Below, piece after piece: positions 15,088 to 43,022 of a stretch of 64,000 bases of DNA (its first letter is position 1; every line of letters begins with the position of its first letter). Position numbers and translations under genes: made by a program. Source of the DNA: Iphione sp. A-MEVVRFRX5 (lineage: Eukaryota); the NCBI GenBank assembly GCA_976226885.1, contig OZ320314.1, forward strand, positions 116,498,001 to 116,562,000, in the 5' to 3' direction. The notes beneath the pieces are model-generated. The model saw nothing but the letters and a program-made list of their open reading frames with translations, had not been told where the DNA came from and searched no databases.

Positions 15088-15167
15088 GTGGTTAGGGTCA
15101 GGGTTAGGGTTAGGGATAGGGTTAGGGTTAGGGTTAGGGTTAGTGCTAGGGTTAGGGTTAGGATTAG
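15088..15167 (+). repeat. Interstitial (TTAGGG)n-like tract inside an inverted-repeat element (about 14975-15240)
   Basis: About 12 degenerate GGGTTA units; flanking arms GTTTATATGGCCAG / CTGGCCATAAAC are near-complementary. Confidence 0.75.
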
Positions 15168-17041: not shown

Positions 17042-17729
17042 TGTAATTCGGTTAACTCTTCCACTTGGTGTAATCCAACTAAACGCTAGCTCCCTTAGTT
17101 ACTCCACTGTAATTCCAGTGAGGCTATGTCCAGTTACTAACTCCAGGATAATTCCCCTGTTGAAATTCCCACTTGGTGAATCCAACTATTGTTAAGTGTT
17201 ATCCTGTCCCAGTTACTTCACTGTAGTCCCAGTGCGGTTACATCCAAGTGCCAACCCTGGGTAATCCAAGTGGGTTTGATATATCCCCAATCAACAAGGT
17301 CCACTAGTGAGTTCCAAGTGCAAACTGTTTTATTGGCCACACAGGGCCCATATTTATAGTCAAACTCCTGGTCATGTGATCCATACAATGTATTATTCAT
17401 GGAATAAAACTGTTACAACATGTGGTGTGTGCCTTACTCTCTACCAATCATCTCAGAGCAATCAGATACAAAGTTACAGATGCCTGGGCATCCAGGGCTC
17501 AGGGCCATACAACTTGCCTGTGGTGCCACAGGCCATGACCATTTTTCTAAATTACTACGACATAGTTACCCTGGCTGGCTGTGGTGCCGCAGCCGAGATC
17601 GTTTCTAGAGTTCACCAAGTACAGTACATGTATCTACTACTGTATACGACTGCAGTGCCACAGTCGACGTTAATTCCAGAGTTCACCAAGTACAGTACAA
17701 GTGGCTGTGGTGCCACAGACAACATTACA
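17042..17729 (-). repeat. 3' LTR
   Basis: TG...CA termini. Matches 27189-27876 except two substitutions found by eye (GTGAGTT/GTGAATT and TATTATT/TATCATT). Confidence 0.97.
17329..17358 (-). promoter_or_regulatory. LTR TATA box (TATAAATA, 17358-17351) and poly(A) signal (AATAAA, 17334-17329); equivalents in the 5' LTR at 27505-27498 and 27481-27476
   Basis: Motifs read on the - strand and positioned as expected for a U3/R boundary. Function inferred. Confidence 0.7.
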
Positions 17730-17742
17730 CTCTCCCCACCTT
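17730..17742 (-). other. Polypurine tract
   Basis: AAGGTGGGGAGAG on the - strand, abutting the TG of the 3' LTR. Confidence 0.9.
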
Positions 17743-17759
17743 AAAACAGTCCGCCGGGG

Positions 17760-18480
17760 GAAGTGCAAACCGGTTATCCTGGGAGGCACAACCTGAGCTA
17801 GCATAACTCTTCCTAGGGAGGTTAACAGTTGTCCTAACAATTCTTGGATAACTACTGGTAACTCTGGCAAAGCCTCCATAGGAGGTGATGATCATTAATA
17901 ACACTCCCAACAATTCTTGGATAACAACTAGTAACTCTGGAAAAGTCTCCATAGGAGGTAATGATCGATACTCACTAGTCATCAACGGTAACAGTCTGGA
18001 ATATGCACATACATACAGGAACAGTCTGGGATAAATGCTTACTCTGGTAAAGCCTCCTTAGGAGGTAGTGATCAATATTCACTGGTCATCAACGGTAACA
18101 GTCTGGAATATGCACGTACATACAGGAACACCCCCCTTTTAGTAATCGATTATCTGGAATGTATGCTGAATCTGGTAAAGTCTCCATGGGAGATAAAGAT
18201 GTAGTCATCACTTCTAATAAGACAAACCTGAACCCCGTTTTTTTTTTTTTTTTTGTGGGGTACAGTCCCCTCCAGTCATTACTTTGATAACACTCCACGG
18301 CCCCATAGGGGGTAACATTTGGCAAGTAACATGGGTAACAATCATCACAGATCAACATCACATTATAGCAAAACATTATAAATACTCCACCTGAGGCAGA
18401 GAACCTGAGTGTATAACCTTTTTTTTTGTGGGGTACAGTCCCCTTCAGTCACTTCCCACAACTCTCCAAACCTTAGTATC
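17760..18480. repeat. Degenerate tandem repeats in the element's 3' non-coding region
   Basis: ACTCTGG(C/A/T)AAAG(C/T)CTCCATAGGAGGT-type unit about 4 times; GTCATCAACGGTAACAGTCTGGAATATGCAC twice; TTTTTTGTGGGGTACAGTCCCC twice. Confidence 0.8.
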
Positions 18481-18650: not shown

Positions 18651-20021
18651 TTACTCCCCGTCCTTCCTCTCCTTCTCCGCTGCAGGGTGCGGTCGGCCCT
18701 CCGCCCCCTTGAGGCAGCGTCTCCACACTTCTTGTGTCCCCAGCAACAGTTGCCTGGGGGCCGAATGACGACAGACGTCATACAAGGTAGGGGACTGCTG
18801 GTCCTGCTGCATCTGCGCGTCGTCTCTTTCACGTAACCACCGAACTGCGTCGGTGGCCCTAGGGCCCCTATCTTGTCCTCCCTCCCTCTGGAGATCCTTA
18901 ATGAGGTTTTCTGCGACAGTAACGGTGTGATTGTTCCGGGCGAGTATATCGTCTACGTTTCCCCAGTCCTGCGGCTGAGGGAGTGCCATCCCGGGCAGGA
19001 GAAGGGCTGGCCTCTGTCGCAGTGGTTCCAACACAGTAGGGGGGAGTGCCCCACCTCCTTCCGCTAACTGGAGCACCCAGGCCAAAGATAATGATGTCAT
19101 CAACCGCTGGACCGGAGAGAGTGCGTCCCAGCGCGGGGGAGGCCAGGTGATGACAGGTGGTAGACGGACCGGGCCTGGCACGAGTTGGCTCCGCATAGTG
19201 GCCACATGGGGAGGGAAGAGGCCAGAGAGGATGTCCTGCACGCGTCCGGTCACATGTGGTCGCCGCCGCGGCGACAGGGTATAGGCGGCCAGCCGGGCCA
19301 GATGGCCCTCCCCCAGGAGTGAAAGCTCGTCTCGGACGCCAGCGGGCCAGGCTTTCCCTTGAGTTGGCACCCGCGATGGCGTACAGGCCGTGCCGGACCC
19401 AGGAGTGGCCGGCCGTCGTTCCTCAGGTGTTGCCGCAACCTCTCCAATCGCCGGTTCCACGGCGGGGGCCTCACAAGGTGGGGAAACCGGTGCCGCCTGT
19501 GTGGAGGAGGCAGCCCCCGACCCCTCCCCAACGGGGCCCCCGATCCTGCACTGACGGGGCAGTGGCGGGGGGTTCGCCCGTTGCGGGCATTCGGCCAACA
19601 TGTGCTCCACATCTTGTTGAGTCAGCACCCATCCCTCCTCTCGGGCCCGGCGGGCACGCATAAGAATAGTGGTCAGTTCGTCATCTGGGGCAGCGACGAT
19701 CCGAGGCCCCCCACTCACTACATCGTGGAGACATCGGTAAGGTTTTTCGGTCAAACCGAAGTCAACGGCCCAGGGGTGGTAGCGTCGCTGGTGGGTAACC
19801 CAGTAGTGTTCATCGTTTATCACCACCGAACACCAAAGGCACATAATATCACGGCCCCGCCCCCCTTCATGCTTATCATGTACATGACGATCATATGAAT
19901 CTTGATTCTTGAATGGACGTGGTACAACACACCTGGTACAGATCTTGGCCTCTGGGGTAAGCTGTAAGTCTGGTGTCAGCTTACTGGGCCACCGTTTTCC
20001 ACCTACCTTCTTGCGCGGCAT
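18651..20021 (-). CDS. Accessory ORF3 of the retrotransposon: C2H2 zinc-finger protein (456 aa from ATG 20021; frame open from 20051)
   Basis: Uninterrupted ORF, ATG in ACAATG context, basic N-terminus PRKKVGGKR. Finger 1 is C-x2-C-x14-H-x4-H (CTRC..F..Y..HVHDKH). Finger 2 is C-x2-C-x12-H-x4-H (CLWC..HQRRYH). A TEKPYRC linker-like segment follows. Confidence 0.8.
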   Translation of the reverse strand: MPRKKVGGKRWPSKLTPDLQLTPEAKICTRCVVPRPFKNQDSYDRHVHDKHEGGRGRDIMCLWCSVVINDEHYWVTHQRRYHPWAVDFGLTEKPYRCLHDVVSGGPRIVAAPDDELTTILMRARRAREEGWVLTQQDVEHMLAECPQRANPPPLPRQCRIGGPVGEGSGAASSTQAAPVSPPCEAPAVEPAIGEVAATPEERRPATPGSGTACTPSRVPTQGKAWPAGVRDELSLLGEGHLARLAAYTLSPRRRPHVTGRVQDILSGLFPPHVATMRSQLVPGPVRLPPVITWPPPRWDALSPVQRLMTSLSLAWVLQLAEGGGALPPTVLEPLRQRPALLLPGMALPQPQDWGNVDDILARNNHTVTVAENLIKDLQREGGQDRGPRATDAVRWLRERDDAQMQQDQQSPTLYDVCRHSAPRQLLLGTQEVWRRCLKGAEGRPHPAAEKERKDGE

Positions 20022-20059
20022 TGTCGGCGCTCGGTGGCTGCGGAACCACAAGCGTCTCG

Positions 20060-20190
20060 GATGCCCTCCACTCGATGCAGCTGTGGGTCCGCAGTCAGTT
20101 TATTCACCTTGTGTGTGTCCTCCTTCTGATACCCTCCACTCGGTACAGCTGTGGGTCCGCAGTCAGTTTATTCAACTTGTATGCGTCCTC
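20060..20190. repeat. 68-bp tandem duplication, each unit carrying the palindrome and a minus-strand AATAAA
   Basis: GAT(G/A)CCCTCCACTCG..CAGCTGTGGGTCCGCAGTCAGTTTATTCA at 20060 and 20128. Confidence 0.9.
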
Positions 20191-20358
20191 TACTCCCTGT
20201 GGCACCACAGCCGCCGAGCTAGCGTCGACGCTTCTGTGGTGCGGTTCCCTTCGCCTTCTTTGCCCTGGTCGTTGTTCTTACTGGTCCAGAAGGTCCAGCT
20301 TCATGTCCTCCTCTTCTTCTCCCACGCTTCCGAGCTGGAGAGCCTTATTTTGCAGTAA

Positions 20359-20730
20359 ATTATAGCAATTTAAATGCCCCAAGCCGAAATCTTCCCTAGA
20401 ATTTTGAGCCCTGGATCGAAAACGAGGCTGGGCGGAAGTTTACGTTTGGCTGCGGTTCCGCAGTCACTGTTTTTTTTCTTTTCTACCGCTGTGGGGCCAC
20501 AGGGTGGAATTTAATGCCTTTCTTTACAAAGTCGGGACCTTTTAAGCTGTTTCCGCAAATTTTCATCAGATTTTGGCAGTCAACGGACTTTCGGCGATGG
20601 GTGCCTGTGGGGCCACAGCCGCTCGGCGTACTGCGTAGTTCGGTTCCCCTCTCTTGCCTGTGGCGCCACAGTCGCTTTCCCGCTCGCGCTGCCTATAAGT
20701 ACCCTCGTTATCCAGGTCTCGGCGTTAGTT
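20359..20730. promoter_or_regulatory. Putative divergent internal promoter
   Basis: Minus-strand TATAAT (20364-20359); plus-strand TATAAG (20694-20699) with Inr-like TTAGTT at 20725-20730; four CTGYGG-NN-CCRCAG palindromes between them. Confidence 0.55.
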
Positions 20731-20758
20731 CTCCAACTGACTTCATAGGATCCACACC

Positions 20759-21022
20759 ATGGAAGGCAGCTACCATCTACCCAGTTGGCTCATGGCCTAT
20801 CCTCCTACTGTGAACCAGTAAGTTCCCTATTGTCTCCAGCTTCAGTCATTTTGTATTTGATGGTTCTGAAATTCAGTTTGTTGTTGTTAGGGTTCTGTTC
20901 AACCTTTCTCTTCATAGGTTAAGATCAGACTCTGGTGGGTGAAGCACCCCTTCATCTCCAGCCTGTGTGTCCTCCTTGCTGCCATTCAGATGGTTAGAAG
21001 GTGAGTGTCCTTGGGTGATTTA

Positions 21023-21055
<33 letters not shown>

Positions 21056-21892
21056 GTTTTGCAGGTACGCCGATTTCTTTTACCTGTGCCTCTTGGTTTT
21101 GCAGGTACGCCGATTTCTTTTACCTGTGCCTCTTGGTTTTGCAGGTACGCCGTCCCTGATGCGTACTACCGACACGTAGACGTCACCACCCCAGGGCCCT
21201 CTTTACGCGTGTACGGTCTCTACAATGTCTTGGACACGCCGCTGTACATCGCGTCGCCTGGCTATGTCCGCCTCTTTGGCCCGGATCACGTTCTGGACGT
21301 GGTGGTCCATCCTGCGGGGCCGTCGGAGCCGCCTCTTCCCACCATACACGATCCATGGTGGTGTGTCGATCGGAATGAGGCTGTCTCCCCTGACCTGGGG
21401 CTTCGGGACGTGGAAGAGACACTGGCGTCTCTCACTCCGGATCCGAGCTACACCAGTCTGGCCACCTCGTCCGCCGCTTCCTGGGCCGACTGCAGTCCTT
21501 CGGCCCCTCATGATGTTCCAGCCTGGGCCCTAGGCATAGACGATCGTGCCTCCCTCTCCTCCACCGACAGCTACGCGGGCACCGACGGGACCGCCTCGAC
21601 GCTGACGTCCAGCCGTCTCGACCCTTGGGGGTCCGACCAGGACCTCAGCGACCTGTTCTCGCCGCTGCCGTCGGCTCCTCCTTCCCCTTCCCTGTCGCTG
21701 GACTCTCCACCATGGTTCCCGGCTTCTCCCTCCTCCTCCGGCACCACTTCCATCAATGACACTCCCGACAGGGGGACCCCCCTACTAGGTCGGGCCCTGC
21801 TGGAGGAGATGCCAACTGACATTCTTTGCCAATGCTACCCAGGCCTCTGCCGGGGGGACTGCGCGTCCTTCCCGATCGTGCTGTCCGACTAA
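20759..21892 (+). CDS. Antisense spliced accessory gene (predicted exons 20759-20817, 20962-21000, 21145-21892; 281 aa), unknown function
   Basis: Donors CCA/GTAAGT (20818) and AAG/GTGAGT (21001); acceptors CTTCATCTCCAG (20961) and GGTTTTGCAG (21144). The joined exons give 846 nt in one frame ending at TAA 21892, followed by AATAAA at 21961. The last exon is better supported than exons 1-2. Confidence 0.62.
21055..21152 (+). repeat. 40-bp tandem repeat that triplicates a splice acceptor, preceded by T30
   Basis: GGTTTTGCAG/GTACGCCG with AG at 21063-64, 21103-04 and 21143-44; T-run 21025-21054. Confidence 0.9.
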
Positions 21893-21960
21893 ACGTCCGA
21901 CTATATGTGTAAATATTGTGAATATGTAAATAGATCCCGTCGCAGCATTAAGGGTTGTTA

Positions 21961-21966
21961 AATAAA
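21961..21966 (+). terminator. Poly(A) signal of the antisense gene
   Basis: AATAAA 69 nt after the stop codon, in an AT-rich island within a GC-rich region. Confidence 0.65.
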
Positions 21967-22714
21967 TTTCAGTTACCTGTTAGTCGTCTCCCTGTGGTTT
22001 TCCTTTCCGTACAGTTCTTAAGTCTTTCTCCCTCTTAAAGGTGTCCAAAGGCAGCCTCTGCTTCCCCTCGACCGGTCTACTAGAGGAAATGGACCGCAAC
22101 TGGGCCCCTCCAGAGGAAAGTGGACCGCATCTTGGCCGTGCAACCACTCCCCTTCGTCCAGAGGACAAGGACAGCATCTTGGGTAAAGTAACCCTGTCCT
22201 ACTTGTGGTCTCACCGTCTCCCGTCCGTCAATCCGTACCGAACCGTTTCGAGCTCCGCCGTCTCCGGGACGTTCACTCCCTACCCGCTTCATAAACGTTT
22301 CGCGTGCTCCAAGGTGTTCATCCTCCCTCCGCAGGCCTTTCGTGCATCTCCAGGAGGTCCGTCCTCCTACCTGGACTTTCTGGGCCGGGTCAAACCCCAG
22401 GATGTCCATCCTCCTCCAGGGAATTTCGGATGCGAAATACGCTTTCGGGCGTTCCCTTTTCGCCCCACGGACTTTTCGAGCGCTACCAGGGGGCCTCCCC
22501 TCTTCACAGGTCGTTTCAAGCCGATGGCTTCCGGGTCGCCTGTCGCACCCATAGTGGCCATTTCGAGCCCTTCCGGCTCCGGGCGGGCCGTCGCCCTCCA
22601 TGAACCTTTTCGAGCATCGCCAGGACGTTTATCATCCTACCTTCCGACTCGCTATTCCTTCCGAGTCTGCGGGACACTGGGTCCCAGCGGGCTTCCTCGC
22701 CCCCCATCTCCTTA

Positions 22715-25700
22715 TCAGGCCTTTCGGGAAGAGGTCTCGCCCCTCGCGGGAGGGACGGGGGCCTCGCTTTTCCTGCGCCAGGAGATGATCCACCGGGGTA
22801 ATTGATCCCCCCGGTACGGCCGTAGACGGTTCCTATGTATGACTTTCGGCCTTGCCTGCTTCGAGCGTTGTACCACCATTCGCTCATCGTCCAGGGCCCG
22901 TATGACTAGCCACGGTCCCGACCAAGGGAAATGGGTTTTGGGACTCTTTCCTTTCGGGGGTTGGGCTTCATGGAGCCATACCGCCGCCCCTGCCTCCAAG
23001 GCGTCTCCCCTCACCCTCCGATCGTATGCCCGGGCCTGGGCTCGGGCCGCCGTGCCCAGCTTCTCCCGGACTCTACTGTACGCTGCTTGGAGACGCCGAA
23101 CCATTCCTCCCACGGGATCAGGTAAGTCCTCCGTAGTAGGAGTCTTTTGAGGGAGACCATCCACCGCATGCACTGGAAGGGTTATCTCCCGCCCGAACAT
23201 GAGGTAGTTCGGAGTGTAACCAGTGCTAGCCTGGGGTGAAGCGCGGTAAGCCATCATCAGGAAAGGAAGTGCGGTGTCCCACTCATCCCGACTCTCAAAG
23301 CAGTGTGCCTTGATCATTTTTCCAAGTGTGCGAAAACTTCGTTCAATGAAACCGTCGCTCTGTGGATGGCGGGGGGTGGTTCTGGTCTTCTTAATGTCAA
23401 GGTAGTCGCAGAGAGCTGTGATGATCTCGCTGCAGAAGTTAGTTCCTTGGTCGCTGTGTAGTTCGTGGAAGCAGCCATAACGGGCGATTACCTCTTCCGC
23501 CAAAATCCGAGCAACCTGAGGAGCCTTTTGGTCTGGTAGCGGGAATGCCTCAAGCCACTTGGTGAAATGGTCGCCCACCATCAAGATATAGCGGTTCCCT
23601 CGTTCAGTCAGCGGCAGAGGTCCCGCCACATCCATGGACCATCGCTCCATGGGCTCCCCTGGCAAATAAGATTTGAGTGGCACTTGGGGACGGAGTGGGT
23701 TCTGGTTCAGCAGGGCGCAGTGACAGCTCTTGCACCAAGTTGCGATGTCTTCTCTCATCCCTGGCCAATAGTAAGCCAACGATACCAGGTAAGTGGTTCG
23801 CTCGGCGGCCAGGTGCGCCCCGGTTTGCCCCGCGTGTACTTCCTTGAAGGCCTTTTCGCGGAGTACGGCTGGTAGGACCACCTGCAGTCGAGAGGGGTCC
23901 CCCCCAAGGCCAGTCCATCTGCGTTGCAGAAGACCATCCGTCAAGGTGAGTCGGCTCCACTGTCGCCAGAGGCTCTTAGTCACAGCTGACAATGGGGCCA
24001 CCCACTCCCAGGGGGGTTGTTGAGGGTCCAGTTCCAGGGCTTTAAGGATCGGCCCCACACACTCGTCCTGGAGTTGAGCCGTTCTCAGTTCTGGATGTTG
24101 GGTCCCCACCGCCTGGCTGCGGGTTACCACCCTCACCTTCTGGGTTACCCCCTCTTCAAGAAGGTGTTCCTGTTTACACTGCCGACAGGGTTGGCGGGAG
24201 AGGGCATCCGCATTGGCATTCAGTCGGCCAGCTCGGTGCTCCAAGTGAACATTGTACTGCCCTACCCGTTCCAGCCAGCGTGCCAGTTGCCCCTCCGGAT
24301 CCTTGATCCGACGGAGCCAGCTTACGGCTCCGTTATCAGTACGCACAGTGACTTCTTGTCCATACAGGTAGAAGTGGAAATGTTTCAGGGCCGCTACCAC
24401 CGCGAGCAGCTCCCTACGCATCACACAATACCGCCGCTCAGGTTCGCTCAGACTGCGGCTATAGTATGCCAGTACTACCTCTCGTCCCTCCTGCCATTGG
24501 GCGAGCACGGCCCCCAGCCCCACATTGCTGGCATCCGTGTCTAGGAAGTAGCGTCCCTCAGGTCGTGGGTACCCCAGGATCGGGCTGGTAGCGAGGGCTG
24601 ACTTTAGCTCCTGAAAGGCCTTTTCTTCCGGCTTTCCCCATGTGAACGGTGTCTTGGCACTGGTTAGCTGGTTCAGAGGGGCTGCCACATTCGCAAAGTG
24701 TGGTACGTAACGCCGGTAATACGAACAGAGGCCTAAGAAGGCGCGCACCTCTGTCGTGCAGGTTGGAGTTGGCCATTCCTCAATGTCCTTCGTCTTGCTG
24801 GGATCTGTAGCCACCCCTTTAGGCGAGACGATATGTCCTAAAAAACCTATTTCTTGCAGGAACAGCTGACATTTTGACGGTTTCAGCTTCAGTCCTGCCG
24901 CCGAGAGCCGCGTCAACACCCGATCCAAGCGGGCCAGGGTTTTCTGGAAGGTCCTTCCGAACACCAGTATGTCATCGAGGTACACTAGACATTGTTCCCA
25001 CGTCAAGCCACGTAACACTGTGTCCATCAGGCGCTCGAACGTTGCTGGTGCATTGATCAACCCAAATGGCATGACGGTAAACTCGTATAGTCCTATGGAC
25101 ATGGAGAATGCCGTCTTCTCCCGATCTTCTGGGTGCATTTGAACCTGCCAGTATCCGGATGCCAAATCCAGGGAGCAGAAATATTTAGCTCCCGACAAGG
25201 TACTCAATGAGTCATCGATCCTTGGTAGTGGGTAGGCGTCAACCTTCGTCTTCTCATTTAATTTCCTATAGTCGACGCAGAACCGAGTGGTCCCATCTTT
25301 CTTTCTCACCATCACTACCGGGCTAGACCACGGGCTGCTACTCTCGACAATCACTCCCTGGTTTTTCATTTCATTCACCAGCTTCCGTTCCTCTTGTCTT
25401 TTTGCGAAGGGCATGCGCCGTGGGGGCTGCTTGATAGGATGTGGATCTTCGGTGTAAATGCGATGTTGTACTACATCTGTGCACCCTAGGTCACCCCGGT
25501 CCCGGGCAAAGGCCAGACTGTGTTTCCTGAGCAACCGCCTCAAACGTCCCTGCTGGTCCGGGGTAAGGGTCTTCGTGGTGGACCCCACCAACTCCTGTAT
25601 CACGTCAGCCACTGCCCTTCTTATGGCACACACACTCTTCTGAGGAGTCACTGACGTTTCATCCCAGGGACGGGCGGGGACCCCCACAGCCACCTGGGTT

Positions 25701-26344
25701 CCCTGTTTCAGGAATATTTCCAATTCGGTCGTGTTCCACATGGGCAGGGTGGCTTCCACCAGGCATCTCATTCCTATCACCCCGTTATTCCACTGTGAAT
25801 CCAGCAGCCCTTCAATCATCAGGGGTGCCCCCCCATTGTGGTTCACTAGCACAGCAACCCCCTCCCCAGGTGGCAGAGTCACATCGTGAGCCACTCGGAT
25901 CTCCACCTCCCGTTTCACCACCCGGCGGCATCTAGGGACGTCATTTTTCAGGGCTATCTCTTGTTTGGCTAGATCGATCACCGCCTTATGCTGGCACAGG
26001 AAGTCACTACCTAGGATGCCATCTTCTTCTACTTCAGCCACTAGGAAATGGTGTGGAAAACTCTTGCCCGCTATTTCTAATTTGCAGGTGCGGTGTCCCA
26101 AAGTAGGGATAACATGCCCTCCCGCCCCAGTGATACACGTCAGTGAACCCCTCTCCTCCAGGCCAGGGACCACACGGGGGTTAACAATGGATACCTCGAC
26201 ACCAGTATCAATCAACAGTTCTAACAATCTTCCATCAAGGCTTACCTTCAGTCGTGGTCCCTGACCTGGTTCCATTGTAGTCCCCGTTAAAGCTATCCCA
26301 GTCGTACCATCCTGGCCTAATTGGTCGACTGAGATCCGTTTCCC
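22715..26344 (-). CDS. pol: Pol polyprotein (protease, RT, RNase H, integrase with GPY/F-type C-terminus), expressed by -1 frameshift
   Basis: LIDTG protease; VVMVRKKDGTTRFCVDYRKLN and YLDD RT; DTDASNVGLGAVL RNase H; integrase H..H/C..C, DVAGPL, SDQG, GFIER and WSGPW. The frame is open from the slippery site to the stop. No chromodomain seen. Confidence 0.97.
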   Translation of the reverse strand, partial: GKRISVDQLGQDGTTGIALTGTTMEPGQGPRLKVSLDGRLLELLIDTGVEVSIVNPRVVPGLEERGSLTCITGAGGHVIPTLGHRTCKLEIAGKSFPHHFLVAEVEEDGILGSDFLCQHKAVIDLAKQEIALKNDVPRCRRVVKREVEIRVAHDVTLPPGEGVAVLVNHNGGAPLMIEGLLDSQWNNGVIGMRCLVEATLPMWNTTELEIFLKQGTQVAVGVPARPWDETSVTPQKSVCAIRRAVADVIQELVGSTTKTLTPDQQGRLRRLLRKHSLAFARDRGDLGCTDVVQHRIYTEDPHPIKQPPRRMPFAKRQEERKLVNEMKNQGVIVESSSPWSSPVVMVRKKDGTTRFCVDYRKLNEKTKVDAYPLPRIDDSLSTLSGAKYFCSLDLASGYWQVQMHPEDREKTAFSMSIGLYEFTVMPFGLINAPATFERLMDTVLRGLTWEQCLVYLDDILVFGRTFQKTLARLDRVLTRLSAAGLKLKPSKCQLFLQEIGFLGHIVSPKGVATDPSKTKDIEEWPTPTCTTEVRAFLGLCSYYRRYVPHFANVAAPLNQLTSAKTPFTWGKPEEKAFQELKSALATSPILGYPRPEGRYFLDTDASNVGLGAVLAQWQEGREVVLAYYSRSLSEPERRYCVMRRELLAVVAALKHFHFYLYGQEVTVRTDNGAVSWLRRIKDPEGQLARWLERVGQYNVHLEHRAGRLNANADALSRQPCRQCKQEHLLEEGVTQKVRVVTRSQAVGTQHPELRTAQLQDECVGPILKALELDPQQPPWEWVAPLSAVTKSLWRQWSRLTLTDGLLQRRWTGLGGDPSRLQVVLPAVLREKAFKEVHAGQTGAHLAAERTTYLVSLAYYWPGMREDIATWCKSCHCALLNQNPLRPQVPLKSYLPGEPMERWSMDVAGPLPLTERGNRYILMVGDHFTKWLEAFPLPDQKAPQVARILAEEVIARYGCFHELHSDQGTNFCSEIITALCDYLDIKKTRTTPRHPQSDGFIERSFRTLGKMIKAHCFESRDEWDTALPFLMMAYRASPQASTGYTPNYLMFGREITLPVHAVDGLPQKTPTTEDLPDPVGGMVRRLQAAYSRVREKLGTAARAQARAYDRRVRGDALEAGAAVWLHEAQPPKGKSPKTHFPWSGPWLVIRALDDERMVVQRSKQARPKVIHRNRLRPYRGDQLPRWIISWRRKSEAPVPPARGETSSRKA
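26292..26344 (-). other. -1 ribosomal frameshift signal (GGGAAAC plus downstream stem-loop)
   Basis: G GGA AAC at 26344-26338 near the end of gag; a -1 slip enters the pol frame. Hairpin CAGTCG-ACCA...TGGT-A-CGACTG starts 6 nt downstream. Confidence 0.85.
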
Positions 26345-27156
26345 TGTAACTCAGGGCAATCACGCCGGAAATGGCCCTCTTGTCCACATTGGAAACATTT
26401 AGTGTAGCGCGGCCTCTTGTTCCTTGCTTCCTCTCGAGCTTGCATCTCTTCTCGGATCTTGGCAAGTTCCTTAGTGAGCTCTTCCATAGGCTTCGTCCAC
26501 GCTGGGGTCGGCGGGGCCTGTACCACCTGTACCCTCTTAGCAACGAATCGTTCCTGAGTCTCCACCACCTGTACTGCCGCGTCCAACGTCGTGCACTTCG
26601 CCTCCAGGCATTTGAGGTGGAGGGAGTCGACCAACGATCGCTGAAAGGCAGCCACGGCGGCCAGTTCCCGAGTCTCCCCGGACACGTCGGGGTAGGCACT
26701 CCTTACCAGACGCCTCACCCTGTCAGCCAGGTCCCGGACATCCTCGTCCTTCTGCCTGCGGATGCTAGAGAGCTTCTGCATGGCCACCACCCGGTCGCGT
26801 CGCCTGCCAAAACGTCGTTCAAGCGCCGTCACACGGGATCCATAATCCCGCTTGTCCTCCGGTGGTAAATCTCCATAATACATACGCGCTGGGCCGGTGA
26901 GCGAAAGCGTCAGGGCAGAACAGCGGGTGTTCTCACTCCACTTGCAAGCGTCCGCCCACTCTGTGAACTGTCCTATCCAACTGTCCCAATCCACAGTCTT
27001 CCCATCGAAGCGTTCAGGCTTCATGGCGTTCATCTTTAAGGGTTCCTCCGGGGCTAGTTCAAACTGCTCACCTTCTTCTTCCTCCTCGCCCGCATGTGCT
27101 GGGCTGGGAACCCGAATTTGCACTTCCTCATCCACTGCCACGTACTGAGTTGCCAT
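26317..27156 (-). CDS. gag: Gag (279 aa)
   Basis: KPERFDG..W..F capsid-like start; CFQCGQEGHFRRDC CCHC zinc knuckle; begins 13 nt after the PBS. Confidence 0.95.
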   Translation of the reverse strand: MATQYVAVDEEVQIRVPSPAHAGEEEEEGEQFELAPEEPLKMNAMKPERFDGKTVDWDSWIGQFTEWADACKWSENTRCSALTLSLTGPARMYYGDLPPEDKRDYGSRVTALERRFGRRRDRVVAMQKLSSIRRQKDEDVRDLADRVRRLVRSAYPDVSGETRELAAVAAFQRSLVDSLHLKCLEAKCTTLDAAVQVVETQERFVAKRVQVVQAPPTPAWTKPMEELTKELAKIREEMQAREEARNKRPRYTKCFQCGQEGHFRRDCPELQGNGSQSTN

Positions 27157-27169
27157 CTTGCTGTTGAGG

Positions 27170-27187
27170 ATCCCACCGCTGCCACCA
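27170..27187 (-). other. Primer-binding site complementary to tRNA-Leu
   Basis: TGGTGGCAGCGGTGGGAT, 1 nt inside the 5' LTR, complementary to the 3' end ...AUCCCACCGCUGCCA-CCA known from metazoan tRNA-Leu(AAG). Confidence 0.88.
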
Positions 27188-27188
27188 G

Positions 27189-27876
27189 TGTAATTCGGTT
27201 AACTCTTCCACTTGGTGTAATCCAACTAAACGCTAGCTCCCTTAGTTACTCCACTGTAATTCCAGTGAGGCTATGTCCAGTTACTAACTCCAGGATAATT
27301 CCCCTGTTGAAATTCCCACTTGGTGAATCCAACTATTGTTAAGTGTTATCCTGTCCCAGTTACTTCACTGTAGTCCCAGTGCGGTTACATCCAAGTGCCA
27401 ACCCTGGGTAATCCAAGTGGGTTTGATATATCCCCAATCAACAAGGTCCACTAGTGAATTCCAAGTGCAAACTGTTTTATTGGCCACACAGGGCCCATAT
27501 TTATAGTCAAACTCCTGGTCATGTGATCCATACAATGTATCATTCATGGAATAAAACTGTTACAACATGTGGTGTGTGCCTTACTCTCTACCAATCATCT
27601 CAGAGCAATCAGATACAAAGTTACAGATGCCTGGGCATCCAGGGCTCAGGGCCATACAACTTGCCTGTGGTGCCACAGGCCATGACCATTTTTCTAAATT
27701 ACTACGACATAGTTACCCTGGCTGGCTGTGGTGCCGCAGCCGAGATCGTTTCTAGAGTTCACCAAGTACAGTACATGTATCTACTACTGTATACGACTGC
27801 AGTGCCACAGTCGACGTTAATTCCAGAGTTCACCAAGTACAGTACAAGTGGCTGTGGTGCCACAGACAACATTACA
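27189..27876 (-). repeat. 5' LTR
   Basis: See 3' LTR; adjacent to the PBS. Confidence 0.97.
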
Positions 27877-27904
27877 ATATAATCAACTCAGAGATGAGCA
27901 GACT

Positions 27905-42178: not shown

Positions 42179-42440
42179 ATGAAGATCGGGCTCACCGTGC
42201 TGCTGTGTTTGGTCATTGTGCTGGTGATCGCTTCCATCCTCTGTCATGTCGTCGCTCTAGCCACGGACTACTGGCTCAAGTCGAGCTCGTCTGGCCAGAC
42301 GGACTTTCTCAACCTCGGCCTGTTCGTCGCCTGCTTCCACGAGTACGTGCACCCGCACGACAACCCACCTCGGACCTACGATGGCTGCCACTATCTCGAA
42401 TCCAACTACTACTCGACCATCAGGGACTGGCTGGTTCCAG
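42179..42440 (+). CDS. Claudin-like (PMP22/EMP/MP20/claudin superfamily; Sinuous/Kune/Megatrachea-like) coding exon 1
   Basis: MKIGLTVLLCLVIVLVIASILCHVVALATDYW..NLGLFVAC..YDGCHY..IRDWLVP. TM1, the W-LGL-C signature and the second loop Cys are present; donor G/GTAGGC. Confidence 0.9.
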
Positions 42441-43022
42441 GTAGGCTTTCAACATTACCTGAACCATATACCTCTCTAACCTGCTACACTGTAGAAGATA
42501 GCTTCATACATATATGTTGGCCTCCCCCCCCCTCTCCCGCGACGACGACGACCACCACCACCACCGCCACCGCGATAGCCATTGATATACCCCACGGTGA
42601 ATGGTGTATAGTCACTGCGAGCCGCCATACACAAACACCGTTACAAACAAACACACCCACACGCGTCTGAACACATCCCAAATGCTCCTTGCTAGGGGCC
42701 ATCTAGAAAAGTAGGTCGCAACGACCAAACAGCCGTGTGCGGTGTAGGATTCTGCTGCTGCTGGCCTTTCGTTGGTGCAGAGGGTTGAGTCATGACCACT
42801 AACATAGCTGTGGCCGTACCAATCTCGTTTTAAAAGTCGAGTCACATATTACATTCTTTACTTAAGCCCAAGGACGGTTAATCTGTCTGTTAAATCATGT
42901 CACTCCCCCCCCCCGCCCCCTACTCGCCCACAAGCATTTCCTTCAGGTTCCCAAAAGGACATTGCTCATCAGAAGGATTCTGATTCTGAATTTTTCGTAT
43001 CGTAGACGTCCACACATTGGTT

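What the first reader, a model, noticed from the sequence alone, without database searches (positions are those of the whole stretch)
20694..21990. Antisense, intron-containing gene inside an LTR retrotransposon
A full gene anatomy lies on the strand opposite gag-pol: TATA, Inr, ATG (CACCATGG), two GT-AG introns of 144 nt each with consensus donors, a 748-nt last exon, a stop and AATAAA. Antisense introns survive retrotransposition because they are not spliced from the genomic RNA. The predicted protein has a short hydrophobic/aromatic N-domain, a long acidic Ser/Pro/Asp tract with spaced Trp/Phe resembling an activation domain, and a C-terminal C-x-C-x4-C-x3-C cluster. It could be a partner or antagonist of the zinc-finger protein (inference).
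Basis: partly seen in the sequence, partly recalled or inferred. Interest (0 to 1): 0.8.

Follow-up and report, generated by a model that had tools for sequence, protein, structure and literature searches.

The report
Antisense intron-bearing gene in retrotransposon
A young, intact Ty3/gypsy retrotransposon of an unidentified animal carries, on the strand opposite gag-pol, what looks like a real small spliced gene with its own promoter and poly(A) signal. It encodes an acidic orphan protein; the arrangement is known in plant and fungal elements and in HTLV-type retroviruses, but I found no report of it in an animal gypsy element.

Summary
ORF length alone is weak evidence: the antisense strand is A-poor, and 1.6% of shuffles of the 2.66-kb spacer reach 295 codons. 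Four other tests support a real gene. (1) Strong 3-base periodicity (chi2 35.5, p 3e-6; 0 of 2000 stop-free nulls) is confined to 21140-21890 in one phase. The neighbouring 254-codon + ORF has none, and all minus frames carry 4-9 stops. (2) The only + strand AATAAA in the 9.5-kb internal region lies 69 nt after the stop. (3) Two of six + strand GTRAGT sites are the model's donors; 2% of shuffles allow such a model. (4) TATAAG/Inr follows 6-7 copies of a 14-bp palindrome found otherwise only in the LTRs.

Caveats: there is no RNA evidence. No relative turned up in 1.84 billion representatives or in the two nearest elements, which share the sense zinc-finger ORF3 but not this gene. A perfect 40-nt repeat triplicates the intron-2 acceptor, and only the third copy keeps frame. 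Function is inferred only.

Verdict: probably a lineage-specific antisense accessory gene, a new variant of a known kind.

The parts
27189..27878 (-). 5' LTR of the element (690 nt, TG...CA). In element orientation it has four palindromes, then TATAAATA, then AATAAA about 20 nt later.
26317..27156 (-). gag with a CCHC zinc knuckle
   Evidence: zf-CCHC 6.4e-7
22715..26275 (-). pol (PR-RT-RNaseH-IN). Its frame is -1 relative to gag, and GGGAAAC lies in the short overlap.
21961..21966 (+). AATAAA, the only one on the + strand in the 9.5-kb internal region. It lies 69 nt after the stop, with a GT/T-rich stretch downstream.
21145..21892 (+). Last exon: 248 codons from 21146 plus TAA. It encodes an acidic, Lys-free, mostly disordered product with a C-terminal four-Cys cluster.
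21001..21144 (+). It contains T30 (21025-21054) and a perfect 40-nt x2.5 repeat (21053-21152) that triplicates the acceptor.
20962..21000 (+). Exon 2 (39 nt, holds an in-frame ATG at 20990)
20818..20961 (+). Intron 1 (GTAAGT...CTCCAG, 144 nt)
20726..20817 (+). Exon 1: a predicted 33-nt 5' UTR from the Inr A at 20726, ATG at 20759 in a strong Kozak context, and 59 coding nt
20694..20699 (+). TATAAG, one of only two TATAAR sites on the + strand of the internal region
20052..20693 (.). Control region between the divergent ORF3 (-) and the antisense gene (+). It holds six copies of the palindrome CTGTGGNNCCACAG (20081, 20149, 20197, 20489, 20605, 20658), plus a more diverged one at 20450. Two of them lie within a 68-nt tandem repeat.
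18651..20021 (-). ORF3: a 456-aa sense-strand accessory protein with two N-terminal C2H2-like fingers. It is shared with the two nearest related elements.
17042..17731 (-). 3' LTR. A purine-rich tract (PPT) lies directly upstream in element orientation (17732-17750), and ATAT flanks both ends of the element.

Best explanation
The element carries a lineage-specific accessory gene on the strand opposite gag-pol, in the 2.7-kb spacer between pol and the sense-strand zinc-finger ORF3.

Mechanism, with shown and inferred steps marked:
- An internal control region (20052-20693) holds 6-7 copies of the 14-bp palindrome that is also repeated four times in each LTR U3 (shown). It therefore probably answers to the same transcription factor as the LTR promoter and fires divergently: leftwards into ORF3, and rightwards from TATAAG/Inr into the antisense gene (inferred).
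- The + strand pre-mRNA of about 1.26 kb is spliced at one or two short GT-AG introns. This joins an upstream ATG to a 248-codon last exon that has no start codon of its own. The RNA is polyadenylated after the only + strand AATAAA (signals shown, use inferred).
- Because the splice signals lie on the opposite strand of the genomic RNA, the introns are copied intact at every retrotransposition (established logic).
- The product is a protein of about 280 residues. It is strongly acidic, has no Lys, is largely disordered, and has spaced Trp/Phe-acidic motifs and a C-terminal four-Cys cluster (shown from sequence).
- Its most likely role is a regulatory adaptor of the element's own expression, in the manner of retroviral accessory proteins. 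Possibly it acts together with, or against, the DNA-binding ORF3 at the palindromes (inferred, low confidence).
- The transcript also overlaps the genomic RNA for 1.26 kb and could act as antisense RNA as well.
For: Coding:
- 3-base periodicity gives chi2 35.5 (p 3e-6), comparable to gag (36.3) and ORF3 (36.6). None of 2000 stop-free Markov nulls reach it.
- The signal rises at about 21140, falls at about 21835, and keeps one phase throughout.
- Across the whole 64 kb, only gag-pol, this exon, a claudin-like host exon and four other windows pass p<0.005.
- The adjacent 254-codon + ORF has chi2 1.9.
- All three minus frames carry 4-9 stops.
- Asp is 10.5% against 2.1% expected from random translation of the same strand, and Arg is 4.0% against 10.7%.

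Signals:
- There is a single + strand AATAAA, 69 nt after the stop. TATAAR occurs at only two + strand sites. Two of six + strand GTRAGT sites are the model's donors.
- Only 2% of dinucleotide shuffles of the upstream 419 nt allow any ATG-to-exon-3 model with GTRAGT donors.

Promoter:
- The palindrome has 14 sites in the window (about 1 expected), all inside the element: four per LTR and six directly upstream of the TATA.

Element:
- The element is young and intact, so the gene was recently copied through RNA with its introns in place.

Precedent:
- Antisense accessory ORFs between pol and the 3' LTR are described with their own promoter for maize Grande gene23, and for RIRE2, Retand and Boty (PMC7264820).
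- Spliced antisense genes are described in deltaretroviruses (PMC10186651, PMC3185765).
Against: - There is no transcript or peptide evidence.
- No homologue was found: the word search was blank. A full HMMER scan of 1.84 billion representatives gave only a score inflated by a five-fold repeat. Metagenome and viral loci gave nothing, and Pfam and PDB gave nothing.
- The two nearest elements (L001, sister with 49% pol identity; L009) share ORF3 but show no counterpart. L001 has no antisense poly(A) signal or periodic antisense region, and L009 has sense ORFs in the spacer.
- The A-poor antisense strand produces long spurious ORFs: 254 codons next door and 455 codons over pol in L001. ORF length alone gives p about 0.016.
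- In this copy three identical acceptors compete. The first follows the T30 tract and leads to a stop at 21177-21179. Only the third gives the long protein.
- Only one copy was available, so purifying selection could not be measured.
- AlphaFold gives mean pLDDT 40.
Confidence: 0.6

Rival explanations
1. The + strand unit is transcribed and perhaps spliced, but it works as a non-coding antisense RNA. It would pair with genomic RNA or feed small-RNA pathways, as with micropia or Ty1 antisense RNAs, and the ORF would be incidental.
For: Promoter, donor and poly(A) signals support a transcript, not necessarily a protein. There is a 1.26-kb overlap with the genomic RNA. There are no homologues. 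Non-coding antisense RNAs of retroelements are documented (PMC7264820; BLV AS1/AS2 in PMC10186651).
Against: Codon periodicity is confined to the last exon in one phase and is as strong as in gag. The Asp excess and Arg deficit are not explained by strand composition. The stop sits 69 nt before the poly(A) signal, and the ATG has a strong Kozak context.
Confidence: 0.14
2. A passenger: a piece of host DNA (a gene or gene fragment with its introns) that became part of this family recently. It would be carried along without serving the element.
For: The gene is absent from the two nearest elements that share ORF3. Transduced aORFs are known, usually in one or a few copies (PMC7264820). The GC-rich exon is flanked by T-rich intronic sequence, like a host gene.
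Against: No host-type homologue exists in 1.84 billion representatives. Its promoter carries the element's own LTR palindrome six times. No second copy or paralogue lies elsewhere in the window.
Confidence: 0.11
3. Nothing functional: a chance ORF on an A-poor strand with chance matches to short signals.
For: Mean longest ORF in shuffles of the spacer is 176 codons, and 16 of 1000 reach 295. Spurious antisense ORFs of 254 and 455 codons lie nearby and in L001. Frame compatibility is guaranteed in this copy, because the three acceptors cover all three phases.
Against: Periodicity test: 0 of 2000 stop-free nulls, localised to the exon. Joint placement of the unique AATAAA, the TATA, two consensus donors and the palindrome cluster.
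Confidence: 0.1
4. The periodicity is the shadow of a decayed sense-strand gene in the pol-ORF3 spacer (the related L009 has sense ORFs there). The + ORF would merely be its codon-aligned antisense frame.
For: L009 has a periodic sense ORF in the equivalent spacer. Codon-aligned antisense frames of coding regions on these purine-rich sense strands are often open.
Against: All three minus frames have 4-9 stops although the element is young with intact gag, pol and ORF3. A minus-strand reading would need about 40% G at codon position 2. There is no similarity to the L009 spacer ORFs.
Confidence: 0.05

Closest known systems
Antisense additional ORFs between pol and the 3' LTR of Ty3/gypsy elements (maize Grande gene23, rice RIRE2, Silene Retand, Phaseolus PvRetro13; fungal Boty brtn), as reviewed in PMC7264820
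   Same: Same slot (between pol and the 3' LTR) and same orientation. The promoter is the gene's own internal one, as shown for gene23. The product is an orphan without database similarity, and a regulatory accessory role is suspected.
   Different: Those are plant and fungal elements, while this one is in an animal genome. There is no sequence similarity. Here the coding region needs splicing to acquire a start codon; the two reviews I read on these ORFs do not describe introns. Here the gene is divergently paired with a sense zinc-finger ORF and shares enhancer palindromes with the LTR.
Deltaretrovirus antisense genes HBZ (HTLV-1) and APH-2/3/4 (PMC10186651, PMC3185765)
   Same: Antisense to gag-pol, produced from spliced transcripts, and encoding regulatory proteins that modulate LTR-driven transcription. 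The RNA itself may also be functional.
   Different: Their promoter lies in the 3' LTR, whereas here it is internal, about 3 kb from the LTR. HBZ has a bZIP domain and none is present here. Those are exogenous complex retroviruses, while this is an env-less Ty3/gypsy retrotransposon.
Sense-strand ORF3 accessory genes of metazoan gypsy-like elements (for example extra ORFs of bdelloid rotifer elements, PMC5408684; CERV of C. elegans Cer1, PMC10309623)
   Same: Extra genes downstream of pol in animal LTR elements. The partner ORF3 of this element is of that kind and is conserved in its clade.
   Different: Those are on the sense strand and are expressed from LTR-driven, often spliced, RNA. The gene studied here is on the opposite strand.

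Membership tests
Ty3/gypsy LTR retrotransposon (host element) | Paired LTRs with TG...CA ends and a target-site duplication | tested here: met
   690-nt LTRs that differ at 2 positions; ATAT flanks both ends
Ty3/gypsy LTR retrotransposon (host element) | gag with a CCHC knuckle and pol in the order PR-RT-RNaseH-IN | tested here: met
   Pfam hits in that order. Nearest relatives are gypsy-type pol proteins at no more than 49% identity.
Antisense aORF between pol and 3' LTR (Grande gene23 / RIRE2 / Retand type) | Lies between pol and the 3' LTR, in antisense orientation | tested here: met
   20694-21990 on the + strand; pol ends at 22715 and the 3' LTR starts at 17731 on the - strand
Antisense aORF between pol and 3' LTR (Grande gene23 / RIRE2 / Retand type) | Present in all or most copies of the family, not a one-off transduction | not testable with these tools
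   Only one copy is in the window. The host genome is not in the searchable collections.
Antisense aORF between pol and 3' LTR (Grande gene23 / RIRE2 / Retand type) | Transcribed from its own promoter | tested here: inconclusive
   TATAAG, an Inr and six LTR-type palindromes lie upstream. No expression data are available.
Antisense aORF between pol and 3' LTR (Grande gene23 / RIRE2 / Retand type) | Sequence similarity to the plant or fungal aORF products | tested here: not met
   No significant hit in the word search or in the HMMER scan of 1.84 billion representatives
Deltaretrovirus HBZ/APH antisense genes | Antisense promoter located in the 3' LTR | tested here: not met
   The promoter-like region is internal (20052-20730), about 3 kb from the 3' LTR
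Deltaretrovirus HBZ/APH antisense genes | Spliced antisense mRNA | tested here: inconclusive
   Consensus donors and acceptors are present, and an intron is needed to supply an ATG. No RNA data are available.
Deltaretrovirus HBZ/APH antisense genes | bZIP domain (HBZ) | tested here: not met
   No Pfam family even at E up to 1
C2H2 zinc-finger ORF3 family of this gypsy clade (partner gene, not the finding itself) | Two N-terminal C-x2-C...H-x4-H fingers plus a C-terminal WPP...(S/T)P.QR motif, on the sense strand downstream of pol | tested here: met
   Window ORF3, L001 14841-17606 and L009 7630-9537. Pfam zf-C2H2 and zf-Di19 hits are weak and below the cut-off. Pairwise tblastn E values are 0.015-0.046.

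The most novel reading that the evidence does not exclude
The pol-to-3'LTR region is a self-contained, divergently transcribed two-gene regulatory cassette. A dimer of the two-finger ORF3 protein would bind the 6+2+6 palindrome CTGTGGNNCCACAG in the LTR U3 and in the internal promoter. The acidic product of the antisense, intron-bearing gene would supply (or block) the activation function. Together they would give an animal Ty3/gypsy retrotransposon a Tax/HBZ-like feedback circuit of its own. The antisense gene may have arisen de novo on the ORF-prone A-poor strand.
Probability: 0.1. Interest if true: 0.85.

Novelty: new variant of a known kind. Interest (0 to 1): 0.55.

Why it matters
Antisense accessory genes of LTR retroelements are poorly understood. 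The plant reviews say their functions are unknown and call for attention to antisense and spliced transcripts (PMC7264820). The best-understood cases are the HBZ-type genes of pathogenic deltaretroviruses.

This would be a compact animal example with three useful properties. Its introns can persist only because of its orientation. Its promoter shares the LTR's enhancer motif. It is divergently paired with a conserved zinc-finger ORF. That makes the question of whether retrotransposons evolve their own transcriptional circuits directly testable with reporter and binding assays. It would also be a candidate case of recent gene gain, captured or de novo, inside a mobile element.

There is a practical lesson too. 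On these A-poor antisense strands ORF length is misleading, and codon periodicity separated the credible ORF from its spurious neighbours.

Tried and rejected
- Homology for the exon-3 product: word search, full HMMER scan, metagenome and viral loci, Pfam at E up to 1 and PDB sequences. All were blank. The single hit, P0121, scores only because a roughly 30-residue motif match is repeated five times (10 of 34 identities per repeat), and I rejected it as chance.
- ORF3: the word search and PDB were blank.
- Structure: AlphaFold single-sequence models of the exon-3 product (pLDDT 40) and of the ORF3 finger region (pLDDT 37) were too poor for fold searches.
- Other copies: none in the window. pol-based scans of metagenome and genome collections gave only short, distant contigs.
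- Relatives: of eight relatives in the 17-member pol clade, DNA was retrievable for only two, L001 and L009.
- Counterpart in relatives: the weak tblastn match of exon 3 to the antisense strand of the L001 spacer (E 0.59) is low-complexity. That spacer shows no periodicity, so I rejected it.
- The palindrome is absent from L001, and no analogous shared motif is convincing there.
- Rfam: no family in the window.
This is absence in the held library only.
Full report
CONTEXT

The window has no N. I do not take it for human. It carries a young, intact Ty3/gypsy element whose nearest pol relatives, at 49% identity or less, come from invertebrate, fish and unnamed environmental assemblies. It also has a claudin-like exon and an interstitial (GGTTAG)13 repeat, so the host is an unidentified metazoan.

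The element lies on the - strand:
- The LTRs are at 27189-27878 and 17042-17731. They are 690 nt long, differ at 2 positions, have TG...CA ends and are flanked by ATAT.
- gag is at 27156-26317 and has a CCHC knuckle.
- pol is at 26275-22715 with the order PR-RT-RNaseH-IN. It is in the -1 frame relative to gag, with GGGAAAC in the short overlap.
- About 5 kb of extra sequence follows pol. It contains a sense ORF3 (20021-18651) with two C2H2-like fingers and, between pol and ORF3, the claimed antisense gene.

OBSERVATION

- TATAAG at 20694.
- Inr-like TTAGTTC, with its A at 20726.
- ATG at 20759 in CACACCATGG.
- Intron 1 at 20818-20961 (GTAAGT...CAG).
- Exon 2 at 20962-21000.
- Intron 2 at 21001-21144 (GTGAGT...CAG).
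- Last exon at 21145-21892, ending in TAA.
- AATAAA at 21961.

The product of the last exon has pI 4.1, 32 Asp+Glu against 10 Arg, and no Lys. It is 34% Ser+Pro+Thr, has spaced Trp/Phe, and has Cys at 228/230/235/239.

IS IT MORE THAN CHANCE?

ORF length is not decisive. The + strand here is only 14-17% A, so stop codons are rare.
- Shuffles of the 2.66-kb spacer have a mean longest ORF of 176 codons, and 16 of 1000 reach 295.
- A 254-codon + ORF lies next door at 22041-22805.
- The sister element L001 has a 455-codon antisense ORF over pol.

Codon periodicity separates real from spurious ORFs.
- The last exon gives chi2 35.5 (p 3e-6). That is as strong as gag (36.3) and ORF3 (36.6), and no stop-free Markov null out of 2000 reaches it.
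- The 254-codon neighbour gives chi2 1.9.
- In sliding windows the signal rises at about 21140, falls at about 21835 and keeps one phase: G lowest at position 2 and A lowest at position 3 in every sub-window.
- Over the whole 64 kb, 16 of 425 windows pass p<0.005. Eight are in gag-pol, three consecutive ones are in this exon, one is the claudin-like exon, and four lie elsewhere.
- The same test lights up only ORF3 in the 3' half of L001, and ORF3 plus one sense spacer ORF in L009. It therefore behaves as a coding detector in these elements.

Periodicity cannot name the strand. However, all three minus frames have 4-9 stops in an otherwise intact young element. A minus-strand reading would also need about 40% G at codon position 2.

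The composition adds support. Ser, Pro and Leu are what the strand would give at random. Asp (10.5% against 2.1%) and Arg (4.0% against 10.7%) are not.

SIGNALS

Within the 9.5-kb internal region the + strand has one AATAAA (69 nt after the stop), two TATAAR sites (one is the model's) and six GTRAGT sites (two are the model's donors).

I enumerated models with GTRAGT donors and pyrimidine-rich acceptors.
- exon 2 skipped (it is 39 nt, so the frame is kept);
- a start at ATG 20792 or ATG 20990;
- a short alternative exon 2 (20990-21000) spliced on to the second acceptor copy at 21105.

Only 20 of 1000 shuffles of the upstream 419 nt allow any such model. The long ORF has no in-frame ATG except near its end, so a protein requires splicing of at least intron 2.

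PROMOTER

A 14-bp palindrome, CTGTGGNNCCACAG, has 14 sites in the window at two mismatches or fewer, against about 1 expected. All are in the element: four in each LTR, and six at 20081-20671 just upstream of the TATA. A seventh, more diverged copy is at 20450. Apart from these motifs the LTR and the internal region share no similarity.

In element orientation the LTR reads four palindromes, then TATAAATA, then AATAAA. The internal cluster lies between the start of ORF3 (- strand) and the antisense TATA (+ strand). This is a divergent arrangement that probably answers to the same factor as the LTR (inference).

CAVEATS

(1) Intron 2 contains T30 and a perfect 40-nt x2.5 repeat, which gives three identical acceptors.
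- The first copy directly follows the T30 tract. It puts the reading frame out of phase and leads to a stop at 21177-21179.
- Only the third copy gives the long protein.
- Because the three copies cover all three phases, frame compatibility is not evidence in this copy.
- Whether the repeat is peculiar to this copy is unknown.

(2) No relatives were found.
- The word search, the HMMER scan of 1.84 billion representatives, metagenome and viral loci, Pfam and PDB gave nothing credible.
- The one hit, P0121, is a five-fold repeat artefact.
- The pol of this element is itself absent from the collections. The host genome is therefore not represented, and the blank says nothing about expression.

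(3) The nearest elements do not have the gene.
- L001 is sister with 100% local support and 49% pol identity. It has 716-nt identical LTRs, the same kind of zinc-finger ORF3 and an 8-kb region after pol. It has no antisense AATAAA, no periodic antisense segment and no palindrome.
- L009 has a 2.7-kb pol-ORF3 spacer like the window, but with sense ORFs in it.
- ORF3 itself is shared by all three elements. It has two N-terminal C2H2-like fingers and a C-terminal WPP...(S/T)P.QR motif.
- The antisense gene is therefore a lineage-specific addition to a clade that already had ORF3.
- Gene-call tables for six further clade members show a sense ORF of 327-600 aa somewhere downstream of pol. One of them has an antisense 217-aa ORF between pol and that sense ORF. 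Their DNA could not be retrieved.

(4) Structure prediction is uninformative, with pLDDT 40 for the exon-3 product and 37 for the ORF3 fingers.

INTERPRETATION

The best reading (about 0.6) is a real antisense, intron-bearing accessory gene with its own internal promoter.

The mechanism of persistence is straightforward. The introns are in the wrong orientation to be spliced from the genomic RNA.

The function is inferred only. The protein is acidic and disordered, with aromatic-acidic motifs, so it could be a transcriptional adaptor. A two-finger ORF3 dimer fits a 6+2+6 palindrome.

The rivals are:
- a functional non-coding antisense RNA (0.14);
- a recently captured passenger (0.11);
- pure chance (0.10);
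- the shadow of a decayed sense gene (0.05).

COMPARISON WITH KNOWN SYSTEMS

In position, orientation and own promoter it works like the plant and fungal antisense aORFs: Grande gene23, RIRE2, Retand and Boty brtn (PMC7264820). In splicing and likely regulatory role it works like HBZ and APH-2 (PMC10186651, PMC3185765).

It is not a member of either group by sequence. It also differs from HBZ in having an internal rather than a 3'-LTR promoter. I found no description of an intron-containing antisense gene in an animal gypsy element in the held literature.

LIMITS OBSERVED

- The joined three-exon protein was neither searched nor folded. Only exon 3 was submitted, by reference.
- In one search a script joined exon pieces solely to check frame and stops, and printed coordinates only.

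Noticed in passing
window 17518-17718, 27665-27865, 20081-20671: The 14-bp palindrome CTGTGGNNCCACAG occurs only inside the element: four per LTR U3 and six or seven in the internal region between ORF3 and the antisense TATA (about 1 expected in 64 kb). It is probably the element's enhancer motif. The factor that binds it is unknown.
   Followed up: partly
window 18651-20021 (-); L001 14841-17606; L009 7630-9537: ORF3 is a conserved sense-strand accessory protein of this gypsy clade. It has two N-terminal C2H2-like fingers and a C-terminal WPP...(S/T)P.QR motif, with only sub-threshold Pfam zinc-finger hits and no PDB or word-search relatives.
   Followed up: partly
window 21025-21152: T30 is followed by a perfect 40-nt x2.5 tandem repeat that triplicates a 3' splice site. 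On the genomic (sense) RNA this reads as an internal A30 tract.
   Followed up: partly
window 20060-20190: A 68-nt tandem repeat (1.9 copies, 90% identical). Each copy carries a palindrome copy and a minus-strand AATAAA (20172, 20104). These potential premature poly(A) signals for the sense RNA lie between pol and ORF3.
   Followed up: no
window 26275-26330 (-): gag and pol overlap by about 10 codons with pol in the -1 frame, and the overlap contains GGGAAAC, a slippery-heptamer-like site. Frameshifting is inferred, not tested.
   Followed up: partly
window 17300-17360 (-): In the LTR, TATAAATA (17358) is followed only about 20 nt later by AATAAA (17334). This implies a very short R, with the poly(A) signal at the U3/R border.
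   Followed up: no
window 27160-27188 (-): The sequence next to the 5' LTR begins TGGTGGCAGCGG, and the same start is present next to the L001 LTR. From memory this resembles the complement of a tRNA-Leu 3' end (primer-binding site). I did not check it against a tRNA sequence.
   Followed up: no
window 22041-22805 (+); L001 12488-13855 (-): Long antisense ORFs (254 and 455 codons) that are composition artefacts of A-poor antisense strands. The first shows no codon periodicity (chi2 1.9); the second lies over pol.
   Followed up: yes
window 15090-15167: An interstitial telomere-like repeat, (GGTTAG)13, about 1.9 kb from the element's 3' LTR.
   Followed up: no
window 42179-42670 (+): A claudin/PMP22-like exon (Pfam Claudin_2, 8.4e-7) with the strongest periodicity outside the element. 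It is the only recognisable host gene piece found.
   Followed up: partly
window 17934-18130 and 18238-18254: A 107-nt tandem repeat (1.8 copies) and a T17 run in the region between ORF3 and the 3' LTR.
   Followed up: no
L001 20575-21468: Seven copies of a 99-nt tandem repeat, open in several frames on both strands, just upstream of the 3' LTR of the sister element.
   Followed up: no
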